Below, one piece after another: positions 960 to 38,995 of a DNA stretch of 64,000 nt. Every line of letters begins with the position of its first letter. Within the stretch, counting starts at the first letter, position 1. The DNA is taken from the NCBI GenBank assembly GCA_037447605.1, contig CM074820.1:930001-994000 (forward strand), read 5' to 3'. Origin of the DNA: Zygnema circumcarinatum SAG 698-1b (lineage: Eukaryota; Plantae; Zygnematophyceae). The translations under genes and the position numbers were made by a program. The notes under the pieces are model-generated. The model made no database searches. It saw only the letters and a program-made list of their open reading frames with translations, and had not been told where the DNA came from.

Positions 960-3207
960 AGACTTTCAGAACAGCCTGCTAGGGGGCAGGTTGTTACAAC
1001 CGGTCACTTCAAGAGGAACTGCCCCAACGTTCAGAATGGCGGTTCATCCTCGAATGCAGATGCTCTAAACGAGCAAGAAGGGAGGAGGGGTGATGGCAGG
1101 TATCCCAGAGATGAACGCAAGAGGATTCACGAGACGAACTTGATGTTCTCAGATTGGGGACCTAATGATGAGTTTGTCGGATGTCTTAGAGTTGAAAATT
1201 CAGCTAAACCTTGGGTGATCGATTCCTGCTTCAAGGCACATGTGCGGATGACTCCACTCTTTGCGCAGAAGGAGATTCTTGGAGGAACCCGCCGGCCCAC
1301 TCAGCAACTGGAGAAGTGAGTCTCGTGACGCAAGGCGAAATGTAAATTTCAAGCAGGTGCTCGGGAGGGAAGCACGCAGAGGGTTGTCCAAGTTGGTAAC
1401 GTACTGCATACTCCCGGACTACAGATTAATTTCCTCTCTGTTAGTCAGCTGTGTGAGAAGGACTATGGAGTATGGTTTGAGAAGGGTAGTTGTGAGGTCA
1501 TTCACAAGGAGACAGTAAGTAAGTCTTGTGCAAGGGGAATCCAAGGTGGGCTTTACTTTCTAGAGTGGAAGGAGGCTCAAGGCCCCACATCCCCGCCAAG
1601 GACCCTGTGGAGGGAACCCATTCTACCTCATAAGATAGATCCAGACCTGCTTGAGGTGGAGGGAAAGGGGATGCTAGAGTAAGCATTGAGGCTCAAAAGG
1701 GAGCAGGGATTATTTCGCCAACGACATTTCAGATAGCCGGGCTAAGGGGGTTGAAAGACCCATCACCGAAAGGGTGGACATTAGTGGTGGTGAGAATGTG
1801 TGCGAATTCCAGGATCACTCAGAGTTAGTGAGCTCCAGGGAGGCCGGAAACACGGGCTTGTTGCATCCAAACAAGGATGGAGTTGAAGTGGAGGAGTCCT
1901 TTCAACCCAGGGTAGTTGAGCAGCCTGAGCATAAGGTTGCGGCTACAAAAGGAATACCCGCTACGTTGACCTATGAGGAGTTCACGGAAGCGCCCAGGAT
2001 CTAATGTGGAAGCACTGTAAGTGGGAGGGATCAAGAGGGGATGATGATCTCGGCCTTTGGATCAAGAGGGGCAGCTTGTTCAGACAAGGAGCATACATTT
2101 AGTTGTGGGACACTAGGATTGTAGTGGTCCCCAGCTGGAACTAGGGGTCTAGCTAGAACCAAGTACCAAGAGGGGAATGTTAGTGTTAAGTAGTTAGGGA
2201 CTTGTTGTACACTAAGTTGTTGGTACTAAGTTCTAAGGAGGGGTGTGCTCATTATGTCTACATTGTACGGCGAACCGTCTAAGTGACCGTACAAGTCTTT
2301 AAGGGGTGTGCGTGTAGCGCGCAGAGCCTGATTTGGCAAGGCAAGGCATCAGAATGTCGGTGCGGCCAATCAGTGGTACGATTTGGAAGGCCAAGACCAT
2401 GGGTGTACGGACATTGGTCGGTGGCGAGGCGCGGCGCGGCGGAGTCAGATGTGACGTGGCGCGACGCGACAAATCGAGAAGTGACGAGGCGCGAATCAGC
2501 GCGCGGAGCAGAACTGACGAGGTACGGAGTCAGCAATGTCTCATTTGGAGGACAGTGGCGAATCGGAAGGCGCCACGTGTCGGGTGAAAGGGAAGGCCTG
2601 TACGGCCTAGGTCGGTGGCGCTCGTAGGCTTACGGGGTCCCACATGACGCCAAGTAATGAGGAGTCAGATCCTACGGTGGAGGACTCGGATGGAGATAAG
2701 GCTGAGGCGGATCTGACGGCAATGATGTGCTGGATCCGTGCAAGCCTACGAGGATCCAACGGCGCGAGATTAGGATCGGGATAAGGGTCTTGCAAGGCGT
2801 TGCATGTGCGGCCGTGACGTGACAATGTCACTAATGGCGCCATATTGTATTTAAGGGTTAGATTGTTTGGTAGAAGTTAACCTTCTCGTGACTCACATTG
2901 GGGAGTGAGGCTATCTTGCTTAGGGCCTAGGAGATAGTGGGAAGAGTTCAGCTTGTAGTGGGTGGTTTATTCACGTAGCTTGAGAGAGGTGCTTGAAGCT
3001 TGGCTCTAGTGTTGTCAAGTTGTATTTCATCTTTATCTTAAGGAGTTTTAGGCTGCTGGCTTTCTCCTTACATTTTCATATTTCTGCTGAGTTGTTCTCT
3101 TGCATTTAGTGTGCTTTGTGTGATTGAGCAATTCATTGAAGATGTCGAGTTCTACCCAGGGTAGAGGAGAAGTGGCAGCCCCACCAAGGGAGGGCGCTGC
3201 ATCAACA
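960..3207 (+). mobile_element. Copia family D, internally deleted copy: decayed gag knuckle/protease/GAG-pre-integrase remnant + PPT + 3' LTR (2178-3207)
   Basis: Remnant motifs GHFKRNCP, PWVIDS and NVLHTPGLQINFLSVSQL are present; there is no INT core, RT or RNase H. PPT AAGAGGGGAA precedes TGTTAGTG at 2178. The LTR ends TCAACA at 3207, matching the end of the second copy at 16260. Confidence 0.75.
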
Positions 3208-6928: not shown

Positions 6929-6969
6929 CTAGAGCGTGTCCACCAGCCGTCGGACCGTCNNNNNNNNNN

Positions 6970-7582
6970 GACGCGTCATCTATCTTGGAGGCAAGGTCAG
7001 ATCCTACGGCGCAAGACGTGGATCGAATGGAAGGCTGAGTCGGATCCGACGGAAGCAAAGGGCTGGATCCGTGTGAGCCTACGAGGATCCGACGGCGCAG
7101 GATTAGGATCGGGATAGGGCCCTTGCAGGCCGCTAGTCGATGTTGTGAAGCTTCGTAGCATGTTGTTGTCACGTGTGTAGTGACATAGTATTTAAGGATT
7201 GTTTTTTGTTGTAGGCAAATAATTCATTGAGAGTACATTGTAGTGTCTACATTATCTTTGTTGCTTCGTGTTCGCGACACTACACTTACTCGTCTTTGTG
7301 AGGTAGTGGTACGTGAGATTCTTGGCCGGTGATTTGAGAGGGTCTCTCAATGTATGAGTGAATTCACTATTAAGGAGTTTTAGAGCCAGGAGCTTTCTCC
7401 TATTCATTTCTCTCTGTTATTCCGCTGTGCATTATTTGCTGTGATTCACTCTGTGAGTAAAATGGGCTATGAGTGAATGTGAGAGATTTGGAATGTCATC
7501 GTCGATTGGAACGCGAACTCCGATGGAGGGTGACCCGAATGGAGGAACGGACGGCAGCAGTGGAGGAGTCCCTCCACCAACA
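6970..7582 (+). mobile_element. Copia family E LTR (left part lost in gap), inserted in the gypsy leader
   Basis: Ends CCAACA at 7582. Near-identical to 17454-17672 (minus). Contains the hairpin motif (7371-7402) and ATG-TCA-TCG (MSSS) at 7493. Confidence 0.8.
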
Positions 7583-11400: not shown

Positions 11401-12387
11401 AAGGCCTGTAGGGCCTAGGTCGGTGGCGATCGTAGGCTTACGGGGTCCCACATGCAGCTGAGTTAGTGAGGAGTCAGATCGTACGGTGCAGGACGAGGAT
11501 CAAGATGAGGCTGAGTTGGATCCGACGGGCTGAGGAGCTGGATCCGTGTAAGCCAAGGAGGATCCGACGGAGCACGATTAAGATCAGGATAAGGCCCTTG
11601 CAAGGCGCTGCATGGGTGGCCGTGACATGACGGCGTCACGTGACAAAGGCCGCCATGGTATATTAGGGAGCAAGCTTGGCTTCCTACCTACTCACTCACT
11701 CACTCGGAACGTTATGCTGCTCAACCTTCGTGTTAGGAAGAGTAGGCAAAGGCGGAGGCCTTGAGGAGTCCGGCCTTGTGTAGGAGGTCGTGAAAGAACT
11801 ATCTCTCATCATGGTTAACTCTAGTGAAAGAGTTAGAGATGTGTCCCTCTCGTGTTGAGGTAGAGGAGAAGTTCAAGCAAGCATATAGTGCTTAGCTACT
11901 GCAGTTGGGGTGTAAGCTGCCTATCAGTGGATAGGGCAGTGCTCATAAGAGGAAGAGAATCGAGCATAAGGTTATATGTAGATTTCCTACGAGAGCTTGT
12001 ATTACACCTATGAATGTTAAGGAGTTTTAGGGCCGAGGGCTTTCTCCTTATACTTGTGTCATTCGTCACATGTGAGTCCTTGTGTTGGATTGGAGTGATG
12101 AATGGGTGGAGGCGACCATTGTATGGGCGGTGTGTCGCATCACACGTGGAGACCATTGGAGGAGCGTGGAGCTGAAGGAGCCGAGACCATGGAGGAGATG
12201 AAGAAGTGTTCTTGTAGGTGGCGCGTTTTGTTTTCCGCTGTGCGCACCTGGTGAGGGGAGGAAGAGAAGGCATATCATGGCGGATGTGGTATGTGGCCTA
12301 AGTAGAAGTGGAAGAAGTTTTGGAGTGTTCACTCAAGCATGTTTTATCCTTCCACTAGGTCTCTCCTTCTGCCCCCTCACACCAACA
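8495..12387 (+). mobile_element. Copia family B non-autonomous element, copy 1: decayed pol interior + PPT + 1.6-kb 3' LTR (10775-12387)
   Basis: [14 protein letters not shown] precedes TGTTGATG at 10775 and the LTR ends CCAACA. The interior has faint pol relics (ACMLGYVEG; KERLKARLVA). It matches 18810-22104 and 22105-24234. Confidence 0.8.
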
Positions 12388-12659
12388 AGGAACGGGTTCC
12401 GTACCATGCTCAGAGATCACGGTGTTTTTAGGGTGGATTGCAAATACCAGTCCTTAGGCTCTGATACCAATGTAACAAACCACTGCCTCCAGCAGGGTTC
12501 GAACTCAGGACCTCCCAATATTCACCTAAGTGCTTTACCATTAAAAGGCAACCGCGGATGTAAGTACTCGGCCATACAACCCATGTATAGCGTTTTAATA
12601 CACATACCTCCTCCCTCTTCTGCTATCCCTGTCCTTGCCTCTCGTAGGCCTTCCCTACA
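12388..12659 (-). mobile_element. Family H LTR element 5' end: 189-bp LTR (12471-12659) + intact tRNA-iMet PBS (12457-12469)
   Basis: Minus strand TGTAGGGAAG...TTTGTTACA is followed by T-TGGTATCAGAGCC, with a TATA-like TATTAAAA at about 12595. The far LTR end (12659) is inferred from the TGTA...TACA termini only. Confidence 0.7.
12484..12550 (-). other. tRNA-like cloverleaf/Pol III B-box module inside the family H LTR (not a canonical tRNA gene)
   Basis: Sequence TGCCTTT TAATGGTAAAGCAC TTAGGTGAATATTGGG AGGTC CTGAGTTCGAACCCTG CT GGAGGCA. It has a 7-bp acceptor-like stem (TGCCTTT/GGAGGCA), a D-loop-like TGGTAAAGC and a B-box GTTCGAACC. Confidence 0.6.
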
Positions 12660-13048: not shown

Positions 13049-16000
13049 TGTTGGAGCGTGNNNNNNNNNNAGCTGTTGCAACCCCCGATGGTTAAGATGT
13101 CCAAGTCTACGATGCCAGAGATTTATGGCAGTTTCAGCCACAGCCATCACATCTTCATCCTCTGTCCTTCTATAATGAAGATAATACAGGCCTCCCTTCT
13201 CATACCCCTCAAACAGCCGCTTCCCCGTCACTGCATGAGTAGCTACACAAGACTTCTCCTTGAACGTGATCTCGTACCCCCTCTTACACACCTGGCTAAC
13301 AGACATGAAGTTCTGTTTCAGCTCGGGGGTGTGAAGGACATCACCGATACATAGACGCTCCTCCCTCTCTTCTTCGTAAGATGGCAGACCGTCGATCATC
13401 TGACTGCTCCTCCTTCGATAAATGTCACTCCCTCTTCCGTCGTGAGCGGATCGGGTCCTCAGCGTGTAGCGTGAAGCATTTGCTTATCGCCACACATGTG
13501 TGTGGAAGCGCCTGAGTCGATCAACCACGGCCGCTTCAGATCCTGAACCTGGATCTTCCCAACAAAGTCAGAATTTTCAGGCCTTTCAGCCATCATCAGA
13601 TTGGTCTCATTCGACCCTCTGCATTCGGTGCTCTTGTGACATCGCTTCTTGTACTTGAAGCGAGATCCCTTAGGCTTTTCGCTGCTTCTTGCGGGTACGT
13701 AGCCTCCTCCTCTCCCGATCTTGGGGACTCTTGTTCTTATGGCGATCGCGTGGTGGCGGTCTTGCCATACGTGTAGCACGCTCCCGCAAGGCGTTCTCCT
13801 CGGTCCGACTTCGGCGCACCTCCTCTTCGGTCTTGTCGTGAGTGCAGCGCTAGCACCTTCTCCTCGGTGCTCCCGGTGTCTTGGACGGTGTCCTCCTCCT
13901 TGATCCTCCGCTTCACTTGCTCAAGGGTCATTTTCGAGTTCGTTAGGACAGTCCTAAGCGCTGCGACTGCTACATCAAATCTGGAGGTCAATCCCCCTAA
14001 GAACTGGCTGATCTTATGGTCACTCTCTAACGGTTTCTGTAGAGCTATGAACCTCTCCATCAAGGTATCAAACCTGACCATATATTCACTCAGTTTCTCA
14101 TCCGAGGTCATCTTCATCTTCCCAAGCTGCGTGTAAAGACTCACTATCGTAACGTTATCCTTTACATCATACATCTCTTCTAAGCACCTCCACATAGCAT
14201 GTGAGGTCTTGAGATCATACAGCATGGACGAAGGACTTCCCCTCACACTCATGACGATCTGGGTGAGCGCTTTGTTGTCCTTGGCACTCCATCTGGCGAG
14301 CGACCGCTTCGTGCTCCGGCCTCCTGCTCCCGCCGTGGCTCCCTCGGTAGCACCGCTGCCTTTGATGGTGCCGTTGGCGTTGCAGCATCCCTTGCCCACG
14401 AGCAAAGGAACCAGCCGCCATCTCCACCCCTTGTAGTCTTGACCGTCGAATGCGGGAATGCTGAACTTCACGTGGTCCTCGTCGCCACCATTGGCTCTGA
14501 TACCACTTGTTGGAGCATGGATCTGCTCGCTGCTCCCGGCGCCACCTCGCGTGTCGCCCTCCATTGGAACTCCGGTTCCCACCGATGAAGACATCTTCAC
14601 TCTCTCTCACTCTATCTCACTTCACTCATAGCCCATAACTCACAGAATGAACGCAGAGACGAGCACAGCGGAAATCACACACGAGAGAGTGTAGGAGAAA
14701 GCTCACGGCTCTAAAACTCCTTTATAATAAGAATGTCACCCACATGAAGTTCTCCCCCTCTCACTAGCTACTTCTCCCCTTACTCACTACCTTGCGACAC
14801 AAGCAGGGCAGCCCAGCAACACGCAGGCACAGAATAAGTCACGGGACTACAGTAGGCTAATGTGGTTATCCTCATGAGCAGGCTAAACCCTATGTGCCGC
14901 CATAGCCGTGTTCGTGACATCTTCCTAGTTGACCAATGTCACGTCACGGCCACCTCATGCGTGCTTCCATGTCGCTGCGCCGTTTAACATCCAGCTTTGC
15001 GGTCCTTCGTAAACCTACGCCAACGCCGACCTAGTTAGGCCGTCCGTACAGTTCCGCCGCCCATCTGAACTTGTCGATGATTGGCACGCAGAACTTCCGC
15101 GCCAATGCAAGTGCACGTGGCCACCCGCGCGGCGTGTGTTGGCTCGCGCGCGCCCCGTACATGTCGCCGCCATGGTCGCAGAGTCTCCATCGTTGGCATT
15201 CGCGTCACGCTTGTCCACATCGCTTCGCGTTTCGACCTGCATCATGGCCCTGACGATGCCGCAACCGCACTAAGGCATCGACGCAGTTCCGCCGACATCA
15301 CAGCATCCTCCGCACCCCGTAGGGCGTCCGCGGGGCCACGATGAGCCAACATATTGTCAAAGCTAGCCAACCTCATATTTCCAGATGGGTACAACGTGTT
15401 AGTGTAAACCCGTACAATGTCTAACTATAGCACACTAACACTAACAATCCCCCTCTTGGGCCTCAGTTCCTCATGGGCCCTAGCCCAATGAGTCTGCTAT
15501 TCACTAGTAGCGTCTCTCCACTAACTCCCTTAGTCAACATATCCACAGCCTGCTCCTTCGTCCCCACGAACTTCACAACAATCATCCCCTCCTCTACCAA
15601 TTCTTGCACAAAATGGTATTGCACTCTGATATGCTTTGTTCTCTTATGAAACAAAGGGTTTTCAACAAGAGCTATGGACGACTGATTATCCGTGAACAAA
15701 GTCAAGGGACGTTGTGGCCTCTTACACTCATCAAAGAAATGTTGGAACCAAACTCCCTCCTTCGCTGCGTGACATGCTCCCATGTACTCGCCTTCGGTGC
15801 TAGACAACGCAACCGAATCCTGTAGCTTCGAGCTCCATGAGATCGCTCCACCTGCGTTCAGGTAAACAAATCCGGAGGTCGATCGCGATGTGTCCACGTC
15901 ACCTCCCCAGTCAGAGTCGGTNNNNNNNNNNGCCTCCCAATGCTCAGGGCCGGGATTCTCCATGAACCGACTCGCGGCGCTCACAGCTTTCGCCAAGTCC

Positions 16001-16259: not shown

Positions 16260-18628
16260 TGTTGTTGCAGCGCCCTCCCTTGGTGGGGCTGCCACTTCTC
16301 CTCTAGCACTTGTAAAACTCGACATTTTCAATGAATTGCTCAATCACACAAAGCACACTAAATGCAAGCAAACAACTCAGCGGAAATATGAAAATGTAAG
16401 GAGAAAGCCACCAGCCTAAAACTCCTTAAGATAAAGATGAAATACAACTTGACAACACTCGAGCCAAGCTTCAAGCACCTCCACTCAAGCTACGTGAATA
16501 AACCACCCACTACAAGCTGAACTCTTCCCACTATCTCCTAGGCCCTAAGCAAGATAGCCTCACTCCCCAATGTGAGTCACGAGAAGGTTCACTTCTACCA
16601 AACAATCTAACCCTTAAATACAATATGGCGCCATTAGTGACATTGTCATGTCACGGCCGCACATGCAACGCCTTGCAAGACCCTTATCCCGATCCTAATC
16701 TCGCGCCGTTGGATCCTCGTAGGCTTGCACGGATCCAGCACATCATTGCCGTCANNNNNNNNNNATTCGATCCTGGGCGCTTCCGCTGAACTCCTCATAG
16801 GTCCAGCAACCGGGTATTCCTTTGTAGCCGCAACCTTGTCCTCAGGCTGCTCAACTACCCTGGGTTGAAAGGACCCCTCCACTTCAACTCCATCCTTGTT
16901 TGGATGCAACAAGCCCGTGTTTCCGGCCTCCTTGGAGCTCACTAACTCTGAGTGATCCTGGAATTCGCACACATTCTCACCACCACTAATGTCCACCCTT
17001 TCGGTGATGGGTCTTTCAACCCCCTTAGCCTGGCTATCTGAAATGTCGTTGGCGAAATAATCCCCTGCTCCCCTGAGCCTCAATGCTTGCTCTAGCATCC
17101 CCTTTCCTCCTCCAAGCAGGTCTGGATCTATCTTATGGTGAATGGGTTCCTCCACAGGGTCCTTGGCGGGATAGCTCAGGCCTTGAGCCTCCTTCCACTC
17201 TAGAAAGTAAAGCCCACCTTGCTGGATTCCCTTGCACAAGACTTGCCCTGTCTCCTTGTGAATGACCTCACAACTACCCTTCTCAAACCATACTCCATAG
17301 TGCTTCTCACACAACTGACTAACAGAGAGGAAATTAATCTGTAGTCCGGGAGTATGCAGTACGTTACCAACATGGACAACCCTCTGCGTGCTTCCCTCCC
17401 CGAGCACCTCCAACTTGACTGTTCCGCCTTGCGTCACCGAGACTCCATCTCCATGTTGGTGGAGGGACTCCTCCACTGCTGCCGTCCGTTCCTCCATTCG
17501 GGTCACCCTCCATCGGAGTTCGCGTTCCAATCGACGATGACATTCCAAATCTCTCACATTCACTCATAGCCCATTTTACTCACAGAGTGAATCACAGCAA
17601 ATAATGCACAGCGGAATAACAGAGAGAAATGAATAGGAGAAAACTCCTGGCTCTAAAACTCCTTAATAGTGANNNNNNNNNNCCAACTGCAGTAGCTAAG
17701 CACTATATGCTTGCTTGAACTTCTCCTCTACCTCAACACGAGAGGGACACATCTCTAACTCTTTCACTAGAGTTAACCATGATGAGAGACAGTTCTTTCA
17801 CGACCCCCTACACAAGGCCGGACTCCTCAAGGCCTCAGCCTCTGCCTACTCTTCCTAACACGAAGGTTGAGCAGCATAACGTTCAGAGTGAGTGAGTGAG
17901 TAAGTAGGAAGCCAAGCTTGCTCCCTCATATACCATGGCGGCCTTTGTCACGTGACGCCGTCATGTCACGGCCACCCATGCAGCGCCTTGCAAGGGCCTT
18001 ATCCTGATCTTAATCGTGCTCCGTCGGATCCTCCTTGGCTCACACGGATCCAGCTCCTCAGCCCGTCGGATCCAACTCAGCCTTCCGTTCAATCCACGCT
18101 CTTGGCGCCAGAGGATCTGGACTCTTGCCTCCAAGATAGATGACGGGCCAATCCTCGCAGCCGCCCCACGCCACCGACACCCGGACGCAGCTCCGCATAG
18201 CTCAATCAAGCACACGATAATCCGACGCCACTTTATGCCAAGTCCAAATCAGCTAATCTGGCGCTGACGCCAAGGCCACGCCACTTCAAATTTATGCTAG
18301 CTTTCAAGGTGGTCGCGATCACATCTTCGGGATGGCTCCGCTAAGCCCGCCACGCCACATTTCACCGTCGCTGCCGCCGCTCGCCACTGACCACAAGCAG
18401 CCGCCGCTCTCCATCAATTAAAGTCCGCATCGCCGCTTCCACGGCCCAGGGCGCTATCAGCCAGTACACACACAAAGACACGACACAAAACTAATGTCCC
18501 AACAACAACTTGTCTAGTGACTAACTACTATACACTAACACTCCAGTTGCCGAGTAGCCCGAGCGGGTTCCCTCCAAAGTCTCCTTCTCTGCAAAGAGTG
18601 AGTCGTCCACGCACATGTGCCTTGAATC
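16260..18628 (-). mobile_element. Copia family D copy 2 (3' LTR part 16260-16754, interior 16765-17453 and 18541-18628), inserted into family-A RT
   Basis: Reverse complement of 2720-3207 and 1225-2000. The flank resumes the RT frame EAQYLLGIQLKR. Confidence 0.8.
17454..18540 (-). mobile_element. Family E solo LTR with 5-bp TSD CTCCA
   Basis: Minus strand runs TGTTAGTG...CCAACA. CTCCA occurs at 17449-17453 and 18541-18545, and removal rejoins the pol frame YSATG|DGVSVTQGG. It contains a gap and a B-like block (17683-18078). Confidence 0.85.
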
Positions 18629-18629
18629 A

Positions 18630-18809: not shown

Positions 18810-21800
18810 TGTTGGTGTGAGGGGGCAGAAGGAGAGACCTAGTGGAAGGATAAAACATGCTTGAGTGAACACTCCAAAACTTCTTCCACTTCTACTTAGG
18901 CCACATACCGCTTCCGCCACGATATGCCTTCTCTTCCTCCCCTCACCAGGTGCGCACAGCGGATAACAAAACGCGCCACCTACAAGAACACTTCTTCATC
19001 TCCTCCATGGTCTCGGCTCCTTCAACTCCACGCTCCTCCAATGGTCTCCACGTGTGATGCGACACACCGCCCATACAATGTTCGCCTCCACTCATTCATC
19101 ACTCCAATCCAACACAAGGACTCACATGTGACGAATGACACAAGTATAAGGAGAAAGCCCTCGGCCCTAAAACTCCTTAACATTCATAGGTGTAATACAA
19201 GCTCTCTTAGGAAATCTACATATAACCTTATGCCCGATTCTCCTCCTCTCATGAGCACTACCCTATCCACTGATAGGCAGCTTACACCCCAACTGCAGTA
19301 GCTAAGCACTATATGCTTGCTTGAACTTCTCCTCTACCTCAACACGAGAGGGACACATCTCTAACTCTTTCACTAGAGTTAACCATGATGAGAGACAGTT
19401 CTTTCACGACCTCCTACACAAGGCCGGACTCCTCAAGGCCTCAGCCTCTGCCTACTCTTCCTAACACGAAGGTTGAGCAGCATAACGTTCCGAGTGAGTG
19501 AGTGAGTAAGTAGGAAGCCAAGCTTGCTCCCTCATATACCATGGCGGCCTTTGTCACGTGACGCCGTCATGTCACGGCCACCCATGCAGCGCCTTGCAAG
19601 GGCCTTATCCTGATCTTAATCGTGCTCCGTCGGATCCTCCTTGGCTCACACGGATCCAGCTCCTCAGCCCGTCGGATCCAACTCAGCCTCATCTTGATCC
19701 TCGTCCTGCACCGTACGATCTGACTCCTCACTAACTCAGCTGCATGTGGGACCCCGTAAGCCTACGGTCGCCACCGACCTAGGCCCTACAGGCCTTACCC
19801 CGAATCTGACATGTGGCGCCTTCCAATTCGCCACTGTCCTCCACATGAGACACTGCTGATGCAGCGCCTCCTCACTCCTGATTCATTGCGCCGACATTCT
19901 GATGTCGCGCCTTGTCACTTTCGAATCTGCCGCGTCGCGCCACGTCACTTCTGAATCCGCCGCGCTGAGCCTAAGCACCGACCAATGTCCGTACCTCGAA
20001 AGTACATACCTAATCATGAGTTATGTTCCGCTTGGAGATTGCATCGCGATCTACACTCTGGCGCGACCAATCATGTTGCTTAGTGCAGATCCGCCTTTCG
20101 CACCAGAGACCTCCGCGTCCGAACATTTCCGCGTCGTCCGTACAGTCGCGCGCCGTCCGTACAGTAACGCTCCAAACCAATTAATGCGCATCCAGCGCAC
20201 CCCCTTTGATACGATCTAAGCCTAAGCCGCAAATCTACGACCCTAGACCTTCCCTGGACCTTCCGTACCATGCCCTAGCACTTTGGGCACCCCCCATGTT
20301 TGAATCCTACACCAAACATGACCATTCAAGCATGACATTGTCCCTACATCAACACATGATCTCCCGGACAACATCCATGCTAGGAACTAAGTACCAACAC
20401 CTTGATGTACCTATACATCAACAATCCCCCTCTTGGTACGTAAGTTCCTTGCAAGCTATACTAACATGGCACCCTAAGCTTAACAACAACTAACTAGGCA
20501 TACCTTGCCGCTTGCACATCAATTCCCTTGAATTGATTCCACCGTAAATGCAATAGCCATTGCACTCTCCCCCGGGCCACCTCTTCCAATAGATGGTCTT
20601 CACTTCGCATGTGCAATCGTTGCACATCAGAACTTCCTTGAGCGTAGTTGACACCTTGTCAACAATGTGGTGGGAACCTTCAACCTCTGAACTCTGCAAA
20701 GGTCATCCTCCAAGGTAAACCCGAGAAGTCCCATCTTCTCCTCCCAACTCACATATCCATGAAGTCGTCTTCTCCATTGTCGCTCACCCCCTCATAAACA
20801 TGAGGTCGTTCATATCTGTCCCTCGAATCCTCCGCGTGGTACTCTCGCCACTTGTTGTAGGCATCCTCCCAAATGAAGTGCCATCTTCATCAGCAACTTC
20901 CTCTACACGATCCTAGGACCTCGCACTATGAACTCACATGTCCACCATGGACAATCTCTACTCACATGTCCCCCATGGACAATCTCTCCTCAGCGCCATC
21001 TGCCAAGGTCAAATCTGAACACCTTGCCTACCCCCTCTTAAGCTCAACAGCCTACTTGTACAAAAACTGGTCCTCCAAAGCCAACTCTAGCTTCGACATC
21101 TTGGCACCCTCCTCTTGTACTCCACCTTTGGGGTCTTAATTCTGCTCAATTGCTCCATCAATGAGCTGGCAAACCGGATGTTCCTCTTCCCTTATCAGGG
21201 TCCTACAAACCCTGCTTGACACTTTCTTCATTGCATGTCAATTTCTCCAAGAGTGTAATACTTGCACCTTTCATATGCATCTGAAAACACCTTACTCTAG
21301 CTTTGTGACTTTCTAAGGAATACCACGAAGGGAAGTGTACTGCACCATCATCATGATGACATTCTCCACACTCTGCTCGTCTCTTGATTCCGTTGCCACC
21401 AGCCGCGCCTTCAAGCGCTCCTTGCCGCCTCTTGATCTCCATGATCACTCGCAGCTCCTCGAACCTTCAAGTTCGTCGCTTCAACACTTCAAGACTGCTC
21501 AGCCTCCTCTATCATAGCACCTTCTTCATTTCTCCAACTCCGGAGAGAAGTCATCTGAAGTCAGCATCACCGGTCCATCGTCCATCGCTAATGATAAGCA
21601 TGATTGGGTCTATTGGGCTACCCTTGTAGCATCCTCCTCCAACCAAGTCGCCGAGTCTTACTATCTTCTTCTTTTGAGGAAAACGAAACTTCCCCTTCAA
21701 AACTCTATCACACACANNNNNNNNNNNNNNNNNNNNNNNNNNNNNNNNNNNNNNNNNNNNNNNNNNNNNNNNNNNNNNNNNNNNNNNNNNNNNNNNNNNN

Positions 21801-24234: not shown

Positions 24235-27200
24235 TGTTGGAGCGTGGATCTGCTCGCTGCTCCCGGCGCCACCTCGCGTGTCGCCCTCCATTGGAACTCC
24301 GGTTCCCACCGATGAAGACATCTTCACTTTCTCTCACTCTATCTCACTTCACTCATAGCCCATAACTCACAGAATGAACACAGAGATGATCACAACGGAA
24401 ATCACACACGAGAAAGTGTAGGAGAAAGCTCACGGCTCTAAAACTCCTTTATATTAAGAATGTCACCCACATGAAGTTCTCCCCATCTCACTAGCTACTT
24501 TACTCACTACCTTAAGCACACAAGCAGGCGTTCTCAAAGAACACGAAAGGTGCAATTTAATAAGTTTCGCATAGAATATGCGACCAATGTGGTTATCCTA
24601 CATAATCAAGCTAAACCCTATATACCGCCATGGCCGTGTTACGTGACATCTTCCTTGTTGACCGATGTCATGTCACGGCCGCCTTCATGCGTTCAGCAGC
24701 CAGGTACGCGTTCAACATCCAGCATTGCGGTTCTTCGTAAACCTACGTCCGCGCCGACCTAGTCAACTCGTCCGTACAGTTTCGCCGCCCATCTGAACTT
24801 GTCGTCCGCTCGAAGCGCGGTAATCCTGCCGCTCGTCTGCATCGCCCGCCGCCTGCGGCGCTATTACGTTCGACAAGGCTACGTACACATCCGCTACCGT
24901 CCGCGACAAATCTCCGGCCGCCGCATTCGCGCTGCCACACCTGTCCGCTGGCCGCCACTGCCCCCTCCGTGAGTTGACCTCGCCGCAGTCCGCTGATCAA
25001 GACGAAGGGGTTCGGACGCTGGGTTCCACGACATCGCCGCATATATTCTCTCAGCGCTCGAAGCGCATCGGCCACCGGAGCATTTGGCCCACCGTATTTC
25101 TAGACTACTAATAGCGTGATCTCATGTTTCCTAACCGAGGACTACAACAATGTTAGTGTGAACCCATACAATGTCTAACTATAACACACTAACACTAACA
25201 ATCCCCCTCTTGGGACTCAGTTCCTCATGGGCCCTAGCCCAATGAGTCTGCTATTCACTAGTTGTGTCTCCCCGCTAACTCCCTTAGTCAACATATCCGC
25301 AGCCTGCTCCTTCGTCCCCACGAACTTCACAACAATCATCCCCTCCTCTACCTATTCTCGCACATAATGGTATTGCACTCTGATGTGCTTTGTTCTCTTA
25401 TGAAACAAAGGGTTTTCAACAAGAGCTATGGACGACTGATTATCCGTGAACAAAGTCAAGGGACGTTGTGGCCTCTTACACTCATCAAAGAAATGTTGGA
25501 ACCAAACTCCCTCCTTCGCTGCGTGACATGCTCCCATGTACTCGCCTTCGGTGCTAGACAACGCAACCGAATCCTGTAGCTTCGAGCTCCATGAGATCGC
25601 TCCACCTGCGTTCAGGTAAACAAATCCGGAGGTCGAACGCGATGTGTCCACGTCACCTCCCCAGTCAGAGTCGGTGTACCCGATGACTTTGTTCGGCCCT
25701 CTCTCGTAACAGAGTCCTTACTCCAAGGTCCCCCGTACGAACCGAAAGATTCGCTTTACGGCCTCCCAATGCTCAGGGCCGGGATTCTCCATGAACCGAC
25801 TCGCGGCGCTCACAGCTTTCGCCAAGTCCGGTCGAGTACCAATCATTANNNNNNNNNNGGGCACGGAGGGAGTTAAACTTCACCACCGCGGCGAAAGTCT
25901 CCGTGTAGTCGATTCCGTACTTCTGGCTGTAGCCCTTCGCCACCAGCCGCGCCTTGTAACGGTCGACACTCCCGTCCGCCTTCCGCTTCACCTTGAACAC
26001 CCACTTGCATCCAATGGCTCTCCTTCCCTTCGGCAGCTTCTCCAGTCGCCACGTCCCGTTCTCTATCAGACTATTCCACTCGCTATCGATCGCTGCTCGC
26101 CACTTCGCTCCATCGACCCCATCGTGAGCCTCCTCGAAGGTTTGCGGCTCAGTGATCATGTAGCAGTGGGCAACTCCTGCGAGGTCAGCNNNNNNNNNNC
26201 TCCGCCTCGACGTTCGGCATTGCTCCCGAGTCAGCTCCTTCGCTCTCCGGCATGCTGATCTCCTCCAAAGCCGGGACCTGAGAGGCTTCAACGCCTTCTC
26301 CGCTGGTCTCCACGTCCTCATACACAATCTCCAATCCTGTCTTTTGGGGCTGGGTCTCACCTAGCCGTGTCACCGCCCCTTTCTCGTCCACCGTGATGTC
26401 CCTCGAGCTCTGCACTTCCTTCGCTCGCGGGTTCCAAATCCTGTAGGTGCGACTGTCCATGTTGTAGCCGAGAACATACCCTTCAACGGCTCGCGGGTCG
26501 AACTTCCTCTTCTGTCTCGCCTTCGGCACCGTCGACCAGCAGCGCGCTCCGAAAGCCTTCAGGTGGGAAACCGTGGGTTTTCTCCCACTCCACACCTCCT
26601 CAGGAACCTGGTCCTTGAGCACAGAAGATGGGCATCTATTCCTAAGGTAAGCTGCGGTCATCACCGCCTCTCCCCAGAAAGAAGCCGGGAAGGGGGAATC
26701 TATCAGCATGGTCCGCGCCATGTCCCCCAACGTCCTATTTACCCTTTCAGCAGCTCCATTACTTTGAGGGGAGTAGGGAGCAGAGAATTCATGCCTAATT
26801 CCACGAGTCTTGAGGTACTCGCCGAACTCCTTCGACTTGAACTCCCCTCCGTTGTCTGAGCGCAGAGTCTTCAGTTTCTGTCCGCTCTCTCGCTCCATCT
26901 GAGTCTGCCAATCTCTGAAGGCTCCGAAAGCCTCAGACTTGTTCTTGAGAATTTTCACCCAAATTTTCCTCGAAAAATCATCGAGAAAAGTGATGAAGTA
27001 CCGAGCTCCTCCACTCGTTGCCGGTGTCACGGGGCCACAAAGGTCGGTGTGAACCAACTCCAGTTTCTCCTGCGCATGGTACGCCTCCTCTCCGCTCCTC
27101 GCGAATGGTTTCCGATGCGCCTTCCCCTCTACACACTCCTTGCAAAAGCCGAGCTCCTTCTCCACGACATCTACGTCTAACCCACGGACCAGCCCCTTAG

Positions 27201-29692
27201 CAGCAAGCTGTTGCAACCCCCGATGGTTAAGATGTCCAAGTCTACGATGCCAGAGATTTATGGCAGTTTCAGCCACAGCCATCACATCTTCATCCTCTGT
27301 CCTTCTATAATGAAGATAATACAGGCCTCCCTTCTCATACCCCTCAAACAGCCGCTTCCCCGTCACTGCATGAGTAGCTACACAAGACTTCTCCTTGAAT
27401 GTGATCTCGTACCCCCTCTTACACACCTGGCTAACAGACATGAAGTTCTGTTTCAGCTCGGGGGTGTGAAGGACATCACCGATACACAAACGCTCCTCCC
27501 TCTCCTCTTCGTAGATGACAGAGCCGTCTCCGAGAATCATCTTGACTACTCCACCCTTCGTGACTGTCACTCCCTCTCCGGTTGCCGAGTGAACAGATCG
27601 AGTCTTCTCCAGCGTGTCCAACGTGGAGAACATCTGCTTGTCGCCACACATGTGTGTGGAAGCGCCTGAGTCGATCAACCAGGGCCGCTTCAGATCCTGA
27701 ACCTGGATCTTCCCAACAAAGTCAGAACCTTCGGGCCTTTCAGCCATCATCAGATTGGTCTCATTCGACCCTCTGCATTCGGTGCTCTTGTGACCTCGCT
27801 TCTTGCACTTGAAGCAGATCCCCTTGAAGCCTTTCTTCTCCTTCTTGCCGAATGCCGGCGCGCCTCCTCCTCCCCGATCTTGGGGACTCTTGTTCTTGTA
27901 GCAGTCTGCCGAGTAGTGGCCGGTCTTGCCACACATGTAGCACGCTCCCGCAGGGCGTTCCCCTCGGTCCGACTTCGGCGCACCTCCTCTTCGGTCTTGT
28001 CGTGAGTGCAGCGCTAGCACCTTCTCCTCGGTGCTCCCGGTGTCTTGGACAGTGTCCTCCTCCTTGATCCTCCGCTTCACTTGCTCAAGGGTCATTTTCG
28101 AGTTCGTTAGGACAGTCCTAAGCGCTGCAACTGCTACGTCAAATCTGGAGGTTAATCCCCCCAAGAACTGGCTGATCTTATGGTCACTCTCTAACGGTTT
28201 CTGTAGAGCTATGAACCTCTCCATCAAGGTATCAAACCTGACCATATATTCACTCAGTTTCTCATCCGAAGTCATCTTCATCTTCCCAAGCTGCGTGTAA
28301 AGACTCACTATCGTGACGTTATCCTTTACATCATACATCTCTTCTAAGCACCTCCACATAGCATGTGAGGTCTTGAGATCATACAGCATGGACGAAGGAC
28401 TTCCCCTCACACTCATGACGATCTGGGTGAGCGCTTTGTTGTCCTTGGCACTCCATCTGGCGAGCGCCACTTCGTGTTCCGACTGCTGCTCCGCCGTGGC
28501 TCCCTCCGGTAGCACCGATGCCTTGATGGTGCCGTTGACGTACCCCAACAGTCCCTTGCCCACGAGCAAAGGGACCAGCCGCCATCTCCACCCCTTGTAG
28601 TCTTGACCGTCGAATGCGGGAATGCTGAACTTCACGTGGTCCTCGTCGCCACCATTGGCTCTGATACCACTTGTTGGAGCGTGGATCTGCTCGCTGCTCC
28701 CGGCGCCACCTCGCGTGTCGCCCTCCATTGGAACTCCGGTTCCCACCGATGAAGACATCTTCACTTTCTCTCACTCTATCTCACTTCACTCATAGCCCAT
28801 AACTCACAGAATGAACACAGAGATGAGCACAGCGGAAATCACACACGAGAAAGTGTAGGAGAAAGCTCACGGCTCTAAAACTCCTTTATAATAAGAATGT
28901 CACCCACATGAAGTTCTCCCCCTCTCACTAGCTACTTCTCCCCTTACTCACTACCTTGCGACACAAGCAGGGCAGCCCAGCAACACGAGCAGGCACAGAA
29001 TAAGTCACGGGACTACAGTAGTCTAATGTGGTTATCCTATACAATCAAGCTAAACCCTATATACCGCCATGGCCGTGTTACGTGACATCTTCCTAGTTGA
29101 CCGATGTCACGTCACGGCCGCCCTCATGCGTTCAGCAGCCGGGTACGCGTTCAACATCCAGCATTGCGGTCCTTCGTAAACCTACGCCAGCGCCGACCTA
29201 GTTAGGCCGTCCGTACAGTTCCGCCGCCCATCTGAACTTGTCGTCCGTTCGAGCGCAGAACTTCCGCCGCCCGTCCGTACGCGTCCGCCGCCCGCGCGCG
29301 CATGTTCGATTCGCGCGCGCCGTACACATTCGCGCCGTCCGCGACGAAATCTCCGTCGTCGCATTTCCGCGCCGTTCACACTTGTCCGCGTGGCTGCTGA
29401 CTCGGTCTCCTCCGTAGTTGACCTCGTCAGAGTCCGCGGACCGCACTAAGGGTCTGACGCGGTTCCGCCGTGTTGACCTCGTCAGAGTCCGCGGACCGCA
29501 CTAAGGGTCTGACGCGGTTCCGCCGACATCACCGACATTCTCCGCGCCCGAAAAGCGTACGGGCCACCGACATTTGGCCCGACCGTATTTCCTAGGACTA
29601 CTACTAGCAGATCTCATGTTTCCCAACTGAGGACCACAACAATGTTAGTGTGAACCCATACAATGTCTAACTATAACACACTAACACTAACA
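24235..29692 (-). mobile_element. Near-complete Ty1/copia element (family A) with 5-bp TSD CAAAC
   Basis: 5' LTR 28672-29692, PBS TGGTATCAGAGCC 28657-28669, [14 protein letters not shown] 25201-25211, 3' LTR 24235-25200. CAAAC occurs at 24230-24234 and 29693-29697. Confidence 0.95.
25217..28758 (-). CDS. Copia Gag-Pol polyprotein (gag, two CCHC knuckles, PR, GAG-pre-integrase, INT, RT, RNase H), broken only by two assembly gaps
   Basis: Motifs: CYMCGKTGHYSADC, CFKCKKRGHKSTEC, WLIDSGASTHM, LWHRRLGHLN..CKEC, HTDLCGP, LRSDNGGEF, NGAAERVNRTL, WVFKVK..RYKARLVAKGYSQ, DSDWGGD, KRTKHI. The first ATG is at 28758, inside the 5' LTR. Confidence 0.92.
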
Positions 29693-31050: not shown

Positions 31051-31143
31051 GGTTTGTCTAATGGTCCGATCTGTGCAACCCTTTGAAGTACAAGGCAGCC
31101 CACTATTACGGGTTTGGAACGCGGTGTGGCAATTGCGCTGACG

Positions 31144-35917: not shown

Positions 35918-36621
35918 TATTGTATGCTTATTGTATGGCGGGTAGTGCGATATGCCACCGGTTGGCTGAGCCGAAGGGGCAGCCAATCCGGGGCTGCCAC
36001 TTGGCAATTAGGGTTGCAGGTCTCCTGGAGGATGGAGGCAGGAGGCAGGGACTGCAAGGAAGCAACGCAGAGGAGGACGAGCTCCCAGGCTCACCGTTCG
36101 GGGAGGGACCCCCTCTCTCTCTGCTCCCCTCTCTCCGCCGCTCTCTTTCTCCCTCCTCCCCGTCCCATCTTCCCCTCTCTCAGTACCCGCCACCCCTTAT
36201 CCACACCGCCCTCATCCTCATCCTCGCCAGTCGGCACGCCCGTTTCGCCGGCCCGCCCGCCCGCCCTTCCCGGTCGCGCCGTGCAAGGCGGTGCATGCGC
36301 CGCTTTCGGCGCCTTGGGGAGGCCTCTTCGGCAGATTTGCAGTTCGGCCGGGTCGTGGCCACGGGTTTACCAAGAAGCTTCGCGGCAGTTGCTCAGATGC
36401 AAAACGACGCGCGGCGTACTTTTGGTCGCAAATTCATAGTAGCATCGGATTTGTCGCCTAGCGTCATGCGCCGCCGTCAGGCCAATCTGAGGAGGCCACG
36501 TAGTGGGCCTGCAGCGATCGGACCTGCTGCTCCCCCGCCCCCGCCCGGTCGGCCCGCGCCTGTCCGTACGGACACAAAATACTGTACTGTACAGTACAGT
36601 AGCAAGGGGGCAGACAGAATA

Positions 36622-36820
36622 GGGGGAGTCAGACCTTGACCATCGCTTACGAAATTCCCGAATTCCTCATACTAAAAGTCATTTCTTTCGTGTACGAATT
36701 CCGGGTCGGGATCCGCGGCTCCGCCGAGCCCAGCCGTACCGAAATGCGTACCTAGCCAATCCTTAATTCGCCCGACAGGCTTACGAAATTGATTAGGCGA
36801 TGGTCAAGGTCTGATCCCCC
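36622..36820. mobile_element. MITE-1 copy 2, TA target duplication
   Basis: TA|GGGGGAGTCAGACCTTGACCATCGC ... GCGATGGTCAAGGTCTGATCCCCC|TA. Confidence 0.85.
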
Positions 36821-36836
36821 TAATGTGGCTATACTA

Positions 36837-37414
36837 GGGGGTGTCAGACTTAAAAAATTCTCGTAATACTAAAAATTCGATATTCGTAACATTTCGAGTC
36901 AACGTTAGTAAAACTAAAATTCTCGAGCGTAGTTTTTCGCACTCGCGGCGCGGTCCTGTTCGCACTCCGCGATCGCCGTCTTCGCACTTCTCCAAACGCC
37001 GTCTTCGCAACTTCGCCCTCGCGCGGGGCCCTCAGACTTAGAAACAGCGCCGGCGCGGCGCGCGGAGACCGCTTGTCGTTGTGTCGTGTTGCGCGTCACG
37101 GCCGGGCGCGGGCGCGGGCGGGAAGCCGGGAAAACAACCATGACGTCACGTTGACGCGATTTTCGCCAGTATTTTCTTCGCACGTCCATTTCGGCGCCTC
37201 TTTTGGGTGCGAACAAAATCGTGCGAAGAAGTGCCCTTTTTCGTAAACCCCACGGGTCAATCTTCGCAACGTTGACCCGTTGACTTAGCACAGTTGACTT
37301 CCGTTCGGTTCGGTTTAGGTTCGGGGGCGCGATGATTTTTAGTACTTAGTAACCTCGATTCTCGTAATACTAAAAACTCGATATTCGTAACATTTTGTTA
37401 AGTCTGACACCCCC
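36837..37414. mobile_element. MITE-2 (578 bp), TA target duplication, TIR related to MITE-1
   Basis: TA|GGGGGTGTCAGACTTAA ... TTAAGTCTGACACCCCC|TA. Confidence 0.85.
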
Positions 37415-37632
37415 TACTGTACGGGATTTGTATGAAAGCCGTCCTTTTGAGAAATCGTTACTGATTTCAAATTAGAACGGGGAAATTTCATAGAACTCAC
37501 GATGGCGAGGCCATCAAATGTACATGGACAAAGGCAAAATGTGGAACCACGAGGGACTGGTCGCAAAGGACCTTAACACAATAAAACGAAGCTAAGAGCG
37601 GAAAACTACGCTTAGGCGCAACAACGCAGCCC

Positions 37633-38995
37633 CTAGAAGCAGCCGCGAAGCTCACCGATGTGAGGCACATCGCGAGGAGGGAGCGGCGGAAGTCCACCGA
37701 CACGGTCGCCAACAACCGCAGCACGCCGAAGAAGCGTAGAAGCGAGGCAGCGCTGAAGGGCCAACGAAAATGCGCTGTCGACAAAAGGTAGCCAGGATCG
37801 ATCGCCGGAGGAGGGCTTGCGGGGCCGTGCATCTCGAAGGAGCGATGGGCGCACTGGCGAAGGAAGGTATCCAAACGGGTGTCGAGGCAACCAAAAATCT
37901 CAATAGCCATAGGAACAAACTGTTGGTGTAACATAGTTAGCATGTTCCACGTTCGTGTTAGCGCTAGAGTTCCTAGGGGCTGGCCTCTATGTCGTTTAGT
38001 AGGAGGGGGCTGTTTGTTTGTCGGTCGGCGTACGACTCAGGCGCGCGGTGCGGCGCAGTGGACAGACAGGACCACAGTGGTACGGCTCCGAAATCAGGAC
38101 CGTACGGACGATAAGGACCGGAGAGGAATGACGGCGCGCGGCGTCGAACGGGCCCGTCCCACGTAGGTTTTCGGGGCTAGGCATTGCGGCTGCGCCTCTG
38201 AGGACGCGACTTCGNNNNNNNNNNGGCCCCGCAAGTGCGGCCGTGACGTGATATTGTCGCGTCACATCCTGTACTATATAGTGTGTAGGATAGAAGGATA
38301 TTGTAACCCTTCTCTTTGGACGGCAAGGCACTGCTGGTGTTGCTGAGTGACTGCCGAGGAGGGAGCTGCTTCCGAACTCTTCATGCGTTGAAGAGGCTGT
38401 TTTGAAGAAGGAGGTAGTGTGGGAAGTAGCAGCCGAGAGTTAGCTTGGTAGAGAAATAGAGGAAGTGGGCAGTCAGGCTTATGGGAGCCTGAGTTGTAAT
38501 CTTCTCTGTTTATATTAAGGAGTTTTAGGGCCTTGAGCTTTCTCCTTACTTTTCTCTCATTCCGCATTTTGTTTTGTTTTGAGGATTTGTTGTTGTATTA
38601 TCTTGGCAAAGAGAGTTGAGAGAAAATGTCTGCGACCACTGAGGATGAGGGAGACAGTTCAGGCGAAAGAAAGAGTGTAGAGGAGTCTGTGAGGAACACC
38701 TCTGCACCAACACAAACTCGTCGGCTGCATCACGGTGAGTATATGCACATTCCTTGCAAAGGGTCGCATCACGAGCAGCCACGCCTTCATGATGTGCTGC
38801 GCGTAACAATAAATCACGACGGGTTGGATCGGCCAACACAATATCCCAAAAAATGCGCCGAGCACCGTCCATAAGAGCCAAATCAGGGCAAACTCCGCGC
38901 TCGCCACGAATTTCAAATTTCATATGTGCAAAATTTGTAAGTCTGTCCTCCCACTCTCCTTTCCTTTTTTCGTGTGATGCCGACAGGGGTATCAC
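37633..38995 (-). mobile_element. CRE-like non-LTR retrotransposon 3' fragment (restriction-like endonuclease domain), split by a solo LTR
   Basis: Removing the solo LTR and one TSD joins CPDLALMDG..WDIVLADP..AA...G.AA.....K...Y..DAADEFV|PMAIEIFG..D..L, followed after a frameshift by LALQRCLAS. This matches the PD..D...K..Y..F.P.A.E.FG...QR RLE pattern. Confidence 0.7.
37921..38712 (+). mobile_element. Copia family G solo LTR with 5-bp TSD CAAAC
   Basis: TGTTGGTG...GCACCAACA, with CAAAC at 37916-37920 and 38713-38717. It contains TATA (about 38276), the hairpin motif (38516-38548) and ATG 38626. Confidence 0.9.

What the first reader, a model, noticed from the sequence alone, without database searches (positions are those of the whole stretch)
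3039..38548. TAR-like bulged RNA hairpin conserved in the R/U5 region of five Copia LTR families
Seen: ten copies of AAGGAG-TTTT-AG(R)GC-N5-GCTTT-CTCCT(T/A) at 3039-3070 and 16397-16428 (D), 7371-7402 and 17634-17665 (E), 12018-12050 and 19147-19179 (B), 14692-14722, 24419-24449 and 28856-28886 (A), and 38516-38548 (G). The sequence around it does not align between families by eye. It folds as an outer stem AAGGAG/CUCCU, a 4-U bulge, an inner stem AGRGC/GCUUU and a freely varying 5-nt loop (CGUGA, CGAGG, UGCUG, UGGUG, CAGGA, CUUGA). Stem substitutions stay pairable (A-U to G-U; GCUUU to GUUUU). It lies downstream of the TATA box; in A, D, E and G it is about 70-100 nt upstream of an MSSS/MSAT-type ATG, so it would be transcribed. 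Established: HIV-1 TAR has the same stem / U-rich bulge / GAGC..GCUC stem / loop layout. Inference: a protein-binding RNA element (elongation, packaging, dimerisation or translation control) specific to this Copia clade. I do not recall it being described.
Basis: partly seen in the sequence, partly recalled or inferred. Interest (0 to 1): 0.82.

Follow-up and report, generated by a model that had tools for sequence, protein, structure and literature searches.

The report
Conserved hairpin motif in Copia LTRs
A 30-letter sequence that can fold into a small bulged hairpin is kept almost letter for letter in the leader part of several otherwise unalignable Copia retrotransposon LTR families of one alga. 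It is real and probably a signal for the element's own RNA, but only its shape resembles HIV TAR.

Summary
Ten copies of AAGGAG-TTTT-AG(R)GC-N5-G(C/T)TTT-CTCCT lie at the stated places, against zero expected by chance. Cross-family identity is 0.88 in the motif and 0.54/0.58 in the 100-nt flanks (shuffled baseline 0.50).

The motif lies inside the LTR:
- 175-360 nt after the TATA box
- 14-20 nt before a second conserved box (TTCCGCTG) in four of the five families (a degenerate TTCGTC there in family B, whose full box lies about 185 nt downstream)
- 74-99 nt before a gag ATG that itself lies in the LTR
- 139-339 nt before the LTR end

In family A the LTR end is followed by a tRNA-iMet primer binding site.

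The hairpin reading is plausible but not shown. No stem pair changes on both sides, and only two one-sided wobble changes occur. Stability is modest (-6.6 to -12.8 kcal/mol). In full leader context the hairpin is the predicted fold in only some families. Both arms and the U4 bulge are invariant and only the loop varies, which points to sequence-specific recognition.

TAR membership fails on position, loop conservation and the lack of a Tat-like gene. My best reading (about 0.4) is a cis-acting leader RNA signal for packaging or reverse-transcription set-up, read by a factor the families share.

No match turned up in Rfam, the metagenome contigs, five of the nearest available Copia loci or the literature. 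Other first-reader notes report what appears to be the same hairpin elsewhere in this genome.

The parts
28857..28886 (-). motif copy A3, in the 5' LTR of a near-complete Copia element
24420..24449 (-). motif copy A2, in the 3' LTR of the same element
   Evidence: the LTR ends CCAACA at 24235, and the same 5-nt GTTTG flanks the element on both sides
14693..14722 (-). motif copy A1, in a 5' LTR followed by a PBS (14494-14505) and gag
3040..3068 (+). motif copy D1 (29 nt, inner arm AGGC)
16399..16427 (-). motif copy D2
7372..7401 (+). motif copy E1
17635..17664 (-). motif copy E2 (GTTTT arm; upstream flank cut by gap 17673-17682)
12019..12048 (+). motif copy B1
19149..19178 (-). motif copy B2
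38517..38546 (+). motif copy G1
28828..28837 (-). second conserved box TTCCGCTGTG of A3. Equivalent boxes: 14664-14673 (-), 24391-24400 (-), 3082-3089 (+), 16378-16385 (-), 7420-7429 (+), 17607-17616 (-), 38560-38565 (+), 12233-12242 (+)
28672..29692 (-). 5' LTR of element A3 (TGTTAG...CCAACA), with TATATA at 29058-29063 and the gag ATG at 28756-28758 inside the LTR
24235..25200 (-). 3' LTR of element A3, preceded by the polypurine tract AAGAGGGGGA
28657..28669 (-). primer binding site TGGTATCAGAGCC (tRNA-iMet 3' end type), 2 nt after the LTR end and inside the gag reading frame

Best explanation
The motif is a cis-acting signal in the 5' leader (U5, possibly R) of the genomic RNA of one Copia clade of this alga. 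It is presented as a small hairpin: a 5-7 bp outer stem, a UUUU bulge, a 4-6 bp G-U-rich inner stem and a free loop. A trans-acting factor common to all these families reads the sequence of both arms and the bulge. That factor is most likely the elements' own Gag/nucleocapsid. The signal would mark the RNA for packaging or dimerisation and help set up reverse-transcription initiation, together with the adjacent TTCCGCTG box. The closest functional parallel is the 5' cis-acting domain of yeast Ty1 RNA.

Shown: the conservation, the position within the LTR, the pairing potential, and the sense-strand bias of that pairing.
For: - Ten copies against 0 expected by chance.
- 25 invariant columns across five families, while 100-nt flanks sit at the shuffled baseline: 0.54/0.58 against 0.50, motif 0.88.
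- Further LTR families in public contigs of the same organism match only 14692-14724 and diverge on both sides.
- The position tracks the gag/PBS end of the LTR, not the promoter. TATA to motif is 175-360 nt, motif to second box 14-20 nt (about 185 nt for the full box in family B), motif to gag ATG 74-99 nt.
- The only pairing conserved across families is the local hairpin. Alternative partners in minimum-energy folds differ by family, and enforcing the hairpin costs 0-5.3 kcal/mol.
- The G-U pairs make the sense strand fold better than the antisense strand.
- LTRs are mosaics between families (E shares U3 with B/D and U5 with A), as expected if the RNAs are co-packaged and recombine.
- Ty1 has its gag start in the LTR and its packaging and reverse-transcription signals in the 5' region (PMC3592414, PMC5454406).
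Against: - No covariation: 8 of 12 pairs never vary and none changes on both sides.
- Modest stability and z-scores.
- The hairpin probability is about 0.01 in A1/A3 and D leaders in some contexts.
- The loops are not palindromic, so this is not a kissing-loop dimerisation site.
- No RNA evidence. No run is on record as RNA, and contigs show neither starts nor ends.
- Gag is available only for family A, so a shared reader is untested.
- Invariant arms fit a DNA-binding protein equally well.
Confidence: 0.4

Rival explanations
1. It is a DNA-level element. An interrupted inverted repeat in the LTR is bound by a host or element protein, such as a transcription factor dimer acting downstream of the start site.
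For: Both arms are invariant in sequence and only the central 5 nt vary, as in a bipartite binding site. There is no covariation. Another short DNA-type box (CCGTGACGTGACA) is conserved in U3 of the same LTRs.
Against: The distance to the TATA box varies from 175 to 360 nt, while the distance to the leader box and the gag ATG is kept. The arms are asymmetric: TTTT sits on one side only. The inner arms match as G-U pairs, not as a DNA palindrome, and the three natural variants lower DNA symmetry while keeping RNA pairing.
Confidence: 0.15
2. It is part of the 3'-end processing signal that sets the R/U5 border. Cleavage would occur at the conserved YA just after the motif or just before it. The AT-rich and UGUA-like letters upstream and the U/GU-rich letters downstream would serve as auxiliary elements.
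For: A TGTA(T/A)-like word lies about 19-22 nt upstream of the motif in four of five families. The motif is the most AT-rich spot of a G-rich leader. It is followed by TACA/TTAC and U/GU-rich runs.
Against: In plant Copia LTRs studied so far R is very short and the poly(A) site lies close to the TATA box (PMC3601003). That would put this motif well inside U5. Family A has TGTGG instead of TGTA. No 3' ends were seen.
Confidence: 0.12
3. It is an accessory site for the tRNA-iMet primer, like the HIV-1 primer activation signal or the Ty1 boxes. The TTCCGCTG box pairs with the D arm of tRNA-iMet, and the hairpin positions or masks that box.
For: The box is complementary to positions 13-20 of the tRNA-iMet 5' half (8 Watson-Crick pairs, up to 13 with G-U) in A, D2, E and B1 (using the sequence printed in PMC13625232). 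Family A uses a tRNA-iMet PBS. Ty1 offers a precedent for T/D-arm contacts (Friant 1998, cited in PMC3592414).
Against: A run of that length occurs in 4-6% of shuffled leaders. G1 keeps only 6 nt. The Ty1 D-arm contact was not confirmed in particles (PMC3592414). The alga's own tRNA-iMet was not available. The hairpin itself has only a PBS-like 6-mer (AGAGCC), which is lost in D and changed in B and G.
Confidence: 0.12
4. It is a TAR-like element that recruits a trans-activator to the nascent RNA to boost elongation.
For: It has the same layout as HIV-1 TAR (established knowledge): a stem, a 5'-side U-rich bulge, a GAGC/GCU(U/C) upper stem and a loop.
Against: It starts about 145 nt or more from the predicted start site. 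The loop, which is essential and conserved in TAR, varies freely. The long gag-to-integrase frame of the one near-complete element carries only Copia gag/pol domains and no extra reading frame is evident, although that element has two assembly gaps.
Confidence: 0.03
5. It has no function of its own. It is a patch of shared sequence kept by recombination or template switching between co-packaged families.
For: The LTRs are mosaics, and the A-E homology begins exactly at the motif.
Against: Recombination spreads sequence but does not protect 25 of 30 positions while the flanks decay to baseline in ten pairwise comparisons. The self-complementarity and the free loop would be unexplained.
Confidence: 0.08

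Closest known systems
HIV-1 TAR hairpin
   Same: A bulged hairpin in the LTR-derived leader, with a U-rich bulge on the 5' side and a GAGC-type upper stem.
   Different: TAR sits at +1 of the RNA, needs Tat and a conserved loop, and is about 59 nt long. This motif is about 30 nt, lies at +145 or further, has a free loop and has no Tat-like gene.
Yeast Ty1 5' cis-acting domain (pseudoknot, PAL sequences, CYC5/CYC3, tRNA-iMet boxes)
   Same: A Copia/Ty1-type element with gag starting in the LTR, the PBS inside gag, a tRNA-iMet primer, and GGAG/CUCC-type short helices in the 5' region needed for packaging and reverse transcription (PMC3592414, PMC5454406).
   Different: There is no sequence similarity. 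The Ty1 leader is much shorter and its signals lie mostly inside gag. Here the motif is a discrete hairpin upstream of the ATG.
HIV-1 primer activation signal / retroviral U5 stems
   Same: A U5 element upstream of the PBS that may contact the primer tRNA outside the acceptor arm (the neighbouring TTCCGCTG box).
   Different: Complementarity is to the D arm, not the T arm. It lies 150 nt or more from the PBS and is statistically only suggestive.
Lineage-specific conserved non-coding motifs of plant Copia LTRs (Sirevirus, Retrofit)
   Same: Short motifs conserved across diverged families of one Copia lineage while the rest of the LTR is free (PMC3601003).
   Different: Those motifs are TATA, poly(A)-site and U3 or PPT-flanking repeats. 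A leader hairpin of this sequence is not among them.

Membership tests
TAR (lentiviral trans-activation response element) | Lies at the extreme 5' end of every transcript (in R, from +1) | tested here: not met
   The motif starts 175-360 nt after the TATA box, so about 145 nt or more into the RNA. The start site itself is inferred, not mapped.
TAR (lentiviral trans-activation response element) | Conserved apical loop needed for cofactor binding | tested here: not met
   Six different loops occur in ten copies.
TAR (lentiviral trans-activation response element) | A cognate Tat-like trans-activator gene in the element | tested here: not met
   In element A3 the long frame 26185-28764 carries only Copia gag, protease and integrase domains, and no extra reading frame of 200 aa or more lies in the element. 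Two assembly gaps limit this test.
TAR (lentiviral trans-activation response element) | Stem with a pyrimidine bulge below a short upper stem | tested here: met
   Isolated folds give this shape in 7 of 8 sequences folded.
Structured RNA element supported by covariation | Compensatory changes on both sides of stem pairs above background | tested here: not met
   0 of 12 pairs change on both sides, and shuffles reach the observed score 500 of 500 times. Only 8 distinct sequences were available, so power is low.
Retroelement packaging/dimerisation signal | Lies in the leader or 5' region of the genomic RNA, conserved among elements that share Gag | tested here: inconclusive
   The position between the TATA box and the gag ATG is met. 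Transcription is not shown, and Gag is known only for family A.
Retroelement packaging/dimerisation signal | Self-complementary loop for kissing dimerisation | tested here: not met
   None of the loops CGUGA, CGAGG, UGCUG, UGGUG, CAGGA or CUUGA is palindromic.
Retroelement packaging/dimerisation signal | Specific binding by Gag/nucleocapsid | not testable with these tools
   This needs binding assays.
Primer-tRNA accessory site (PAS, Ty1 boxes) | Complementarity to the primer tRNA outside its 3' acceptor end | tested here: inconclusive
   The hairpin shares only a 6-mer with the PBS. The neighbouring box gives 8 Watson-Crick pairs to the D arm, and 4-6% of shuffles do as well. The tRNA sequence used is human.
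Any Rfam family | Match at the gathering score | tested here: not met
   There are 0 matches in the window. With permissive filters on the A3 leader only a chance snoRNA hit appears, at E=7.9.
Poly(A) signal / R-U5 border | RNA 3' ends mapped next to the motif | not testable with these tools
   Only contig runs were served, and they show no ends or tails.

The most novel reading that the evidence does not exclude
The hairpin and the TTCCGCTG box 14-20 nt downstream form one module that the clade's Gag and the tRNA-iMet primer read together. The bulged hairpin selects the RNA, and the box captures the D arm of the primer. This would be the first defined packaging and primer-activation signal for a Copia lineage of the plant/algal branch, and one shared across families that therefore co-package and recombine.
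Probability: 0.2. Interest if true: 0.6.

Novelty: new member of a known kind. Interest (0 to 1): 0.42.

Why it matters
Cis-acting RNA signals for packaging and for starting reverse transcription are mapped for retroviruses and for yeast Ty1/Ty3, but hardly at all for Copia elements of plants and algae. A 30-nt element kept across families whose LTRs otherwise share nothing is a ready-made handle for finding that signal. It can be mutated, probed and used as bait. It also gives a simple marker for collecting this clade's LTRs genome-wide, and it may explain why these families exchange LTR segments. It would not change how retroelements are understood.

Tried and rejected
- RNA evidence. No run is on record as RNA, and contigs gave neither starts, ends nor tails. 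One GT..AG 'skip' (14719 to 14823, one contig, 27-nt side) is best read as a diverged LTR that aligns only at the motif, not as an intron.
- Other organisms. An exact-pattern scan of metagenome contigs gave 16 hits, none with the inner stem, so they are chance matches.
- Relatives. The first protein search found at most 29% identity. The integrase-region search found at most 51%. Five loci of such relatives have no motif. The exact window proteins are not in the protein collection.
- Rfam: no match. Literature search for the motif strings returned only primers and guide RNAs.
- PBS-likeness of the 5' arm (GAGTTTTAGAGCC against TGGTATCAGAGCC, 9 of 13). Rejected, because it rests on one 6-mer that is lost in D and altered in B and G.
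- Coding. Rejected, because D has a 1-nt deletion and two of the three frames hit a stop.
- 3' splice site (TTTTAG), histone stem-loop, Sm site, hammerhead. Considered by eye and rejected, because the defining letters or pairings are absent.
- Short upstream ORFs ending at or in the motif (A, E, B), as in ribosome shunting. Rejected, because D has none and the hairpin is far too weak.
- A conserved alternative long-range helix. Rejected, because the partners differ in every family.
- The plant tRNA-iMet D-arm string was not found in searchable papers. Only the human sequence could be cited.
Full report
**1. The observation**

A pattern search finds eight exact matches to the 30-nt pattern and two 29-nt D-type copies. 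Shuffled sequence gives none. The copies are D1 3040+, D2 16399-, E1 7372+, E2 17635-, B1 12019+, B2 19149-, A1 14693-, A2 24420-, A3 28857- and G1 38517+. A covariance model built from them recovers only these ten in the 64-kb window.

None of the copies touches an assembly gap. E2 has a gap 8 nt upstream. Public contigs bridge gap 15922-15931 with about 85 letters. They do not bridge gap 16755-16764 and continue instead into B-like U3 sequence. The scaffold is therefore a patchwork of repeat copies, and continuity across gaps should not be assumed.

**2. Where the motif sits**

Element A3 on the minus strand has these features:
- The 5' LTR runs from 29692 (TGTTAG) to 28672 (CCAACA).
- A 2-nt spacer follows, then the primer binding site TGGTATCAGAGCC at 28669-28657.
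- A gag-protease-integrase frame follows (Pfam).
- The polypurine tract AAGAGGGGGA precedes a 3' LTR at 25200-24235.
- The same 5-nt GTTTG flanks both ends.

Copy A2 is therefore in the 3' LTR of A3, and the motif lies inside the LTR.

All families end their LTR with C(C)AACA, 139-339 nt after the motif. Pairs of copies diverge exactly there. The TATA box lies 175-193 nt upstream in A, D and E, 242 nt upstream in G and perhaps 360 nt upstream in B. A second conserved box (TTCCGCTG) lies 14-20 nt downstream in A, D, E and G. B has a degenerate version there and a full one about 185 nt downstream. The gag ATG lies 74-99 nt downstream, inside the LTR.

The motif therefore keeps its place relative to the gag/PBS end of the LTR, not relative to the promoter. 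In plant Copia LTRs R is very short and lies close to the TATA box (PMC3601003). By that analogy the motif is in U5, but this is inference.

**3. How conserved it is**

Across A3, B1, D1, E1 and G1 the motif is 0.80-0.93 identical. The 100-nt flanks average 0.54 upstream and 0.58 downstream, against 0.50 for shuffled flanks. The exception is the A-E pair downstream, at 0.73. Twenty-five columns are invariant: both arms of both stems, the TTTT run, and two T positions upstream.

Contigs from four public runs of the same organism match only 14692-14724 and then run on with unrelated letters on both sides. This shows further LTR families with the same motif, and one of them also carries TTCCGC downstream. 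Three other first-reader notes on other pieces of this genome (s1-393350, s1-406486, s1-387219) report what appears to be the same U-bulged hairpin. I could not see or test them.

**4. Is it an RNA hairpin?**

Folded alone, 7 of 8 sequences give the proposed shape, at -9 to -12.8 kcal/mol. E2, with its C-to-T change, prefers another fold at -6.7. Z-scores are only -0.45 to -2.3.

In leader context the pairing probability is high in B and E, variable in D and G, and about 0.01 in A1/A3. Enforcing the hairpin costs 0-5.3 kcal/mol, and the competing partners differ in every family. The local hairpin is therefore the only pairing common to all families.

The sense strand folds 2.3-3.4 kcal/mol better than the antisense strand in six of seven variants, because the inner stem uses G-U pairs.

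Covariation is absent. Of 12 pairs, 8 never vary, 2 show a one-sided wobble change, 2 outer pairs are simply missing in A and E, and none changes on both sides. All 500 shuffles reach the observed score.

The pattern of invariant arms and bulge with a free loop argues for recognition of sequence, whether by a protein or by another nucleic acid. A shape-only constraint would not produce it.

**5. What it is not**

- It is not TAR. It sits in the wrong position, its loop is free, and no accessory gene is evident.
- It is not a known RNA family.
- It was not found in metagenome contigs, nor in five loci of the nearest retrievable Copia relatives, which are at most 51% identical in integrase.
- It was not found in the searchable literature.

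**6. Best reading and rivals**

I read the motif as a cis-acting leader RNA signal of this Copia clade, read sequence-specifically by a factor the families share. That factor is most likely Gag/nucleocapsid, acting in packaging or dimerisation and in setting up reverse transcription (confidence about 0.4).

The mosaic LTRs fit families whose RNAs are co-packaged. E shares U3 with B/D and U5 with A, and the A-E homology starts at the motif.

Ty1 is the closest functional parallel. Its gag starts in the LTR, its PBS lies inside gag, it uses tRNA-iMet, and it has short GGAG/CUCC-type helices and tRNA contacts in the 5' domain (PMC3592414, PMC5454406).

The neighbouring box is complementary to positions 13-20 of the tRNA-iMet 5' half, and up to 13 pairs form with G-U. 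A run of that length arises in 4-6% of shuffled leaders, and the alga's own tRNA was not available, so I rate this only as a lead.

The rivals are:
- a DNA binding site (0.15)
- a 3'-end processing element at the R/U5 border (0.12)
- a primer-tRNA accessory module (0.12)
- a recombination relic (0.08)
- a TAR-like element (0.03)

**7. Verdict**

The structural and TAR-like interpretation is only partly supported. The motif is an undescribed, lineage-restricted member of a known kind, the conserved cis-acting leader elements of LTR retroelements. Its function is untested. Interest is moderate.

Noticed in passing
window 28828-28838 (-), 14664-14673 (-), 7420-7429 (+), 16378-16385 (-), 12233-12242 (+): A second conserved leader box, TTCCGCTG(TG), lies 14-20 nt after the motif (about 185 nt in B). 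It is complementary to the D-arm region of tRNA-iMet: 8 Watson-Crick pairs, and up to 13 with G-U. This recalls the Ty1 tRNA boxes, but 4-6% of shuffled leaders do as well.
   Followed up: partly
window 28756-28758 (-) ATG; LTR end 28672; PBS 28657-28669: The gag start codon lies inside the LTR, and the frame reads through the LTR end and the primer binding site, as in yeast Ty1. ATGs at matching distances occur in D, E and G.
   Followed up: partly
window 24235-29692 (-): Element A3 has matching 5-nt flanks (GTTTG), but its two LTRs are only 82% identical, in patches. The ends, the promoter and the leader are 95-100% identical, while mid-U3 and the stretch just after the TATA box are 28-75% identical. 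This suggests conversion, recombination or a chimeric assembly; two gaps lie inside the element.
   Followed up: partly
window 6974-7134 vs 11473-11609 and 2664-2794; 7368-7537 vs 28714-28890: The LTRs are mosaics. Family E shares U3 segments with B and D and shares its leader with A, and the A-E homology starts 4 nt before the motif.
   Followed up: partly
window 29107-29115 (-), 2814-2822 (+), 38243-38251 (+): A conserved U3 box, (CC)GTGACGTGA(CA) with an ACGT core, lies about 32-52 nt upstream of the TATA box in families A, D and G.
   Followed up: no
window 12458-12469 (-) and 12471-12659: A second tRNA-iMet-type PBS on the opposite strand lies about 70 nt beyond the end of the B1 LTR. It belongs to a small element with a tRNA-like LTR, which earlier notes record as a TRIM.
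   Followed up: no
L017:1-330: A distant Copia element (29% identical protein, Logan contig) has an LTR ending CAACA followed by GGTTATGGGCCCAGG. From memory this looks complementary to the anticodon stem-loop of tRNA-iMet, the half-tRNA primer type known from Ty5.
   Followed up: no
window 28886-28910 (-), 7350-7384 (+), 12005-12031 (+): Short upstream reading frames end exactly at the start of the motif (A) or at the TAG inside it (E, B). D has none.
   Followed up: no
window 15922-15931 and 16755-16764: Public contigs bridge the first gap with about 85 letters. At the second gap they continue into B-like U3 sequence instead of the letters after the gap, so the two sides are probably not contiguous.
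   Followed up: partly
window 29417-29537 (-): About 60 nt are duplicated in tandem in U3 of the A3 5' LTR. The 3' LTR lacks a clear second copy.
   Followed up: no
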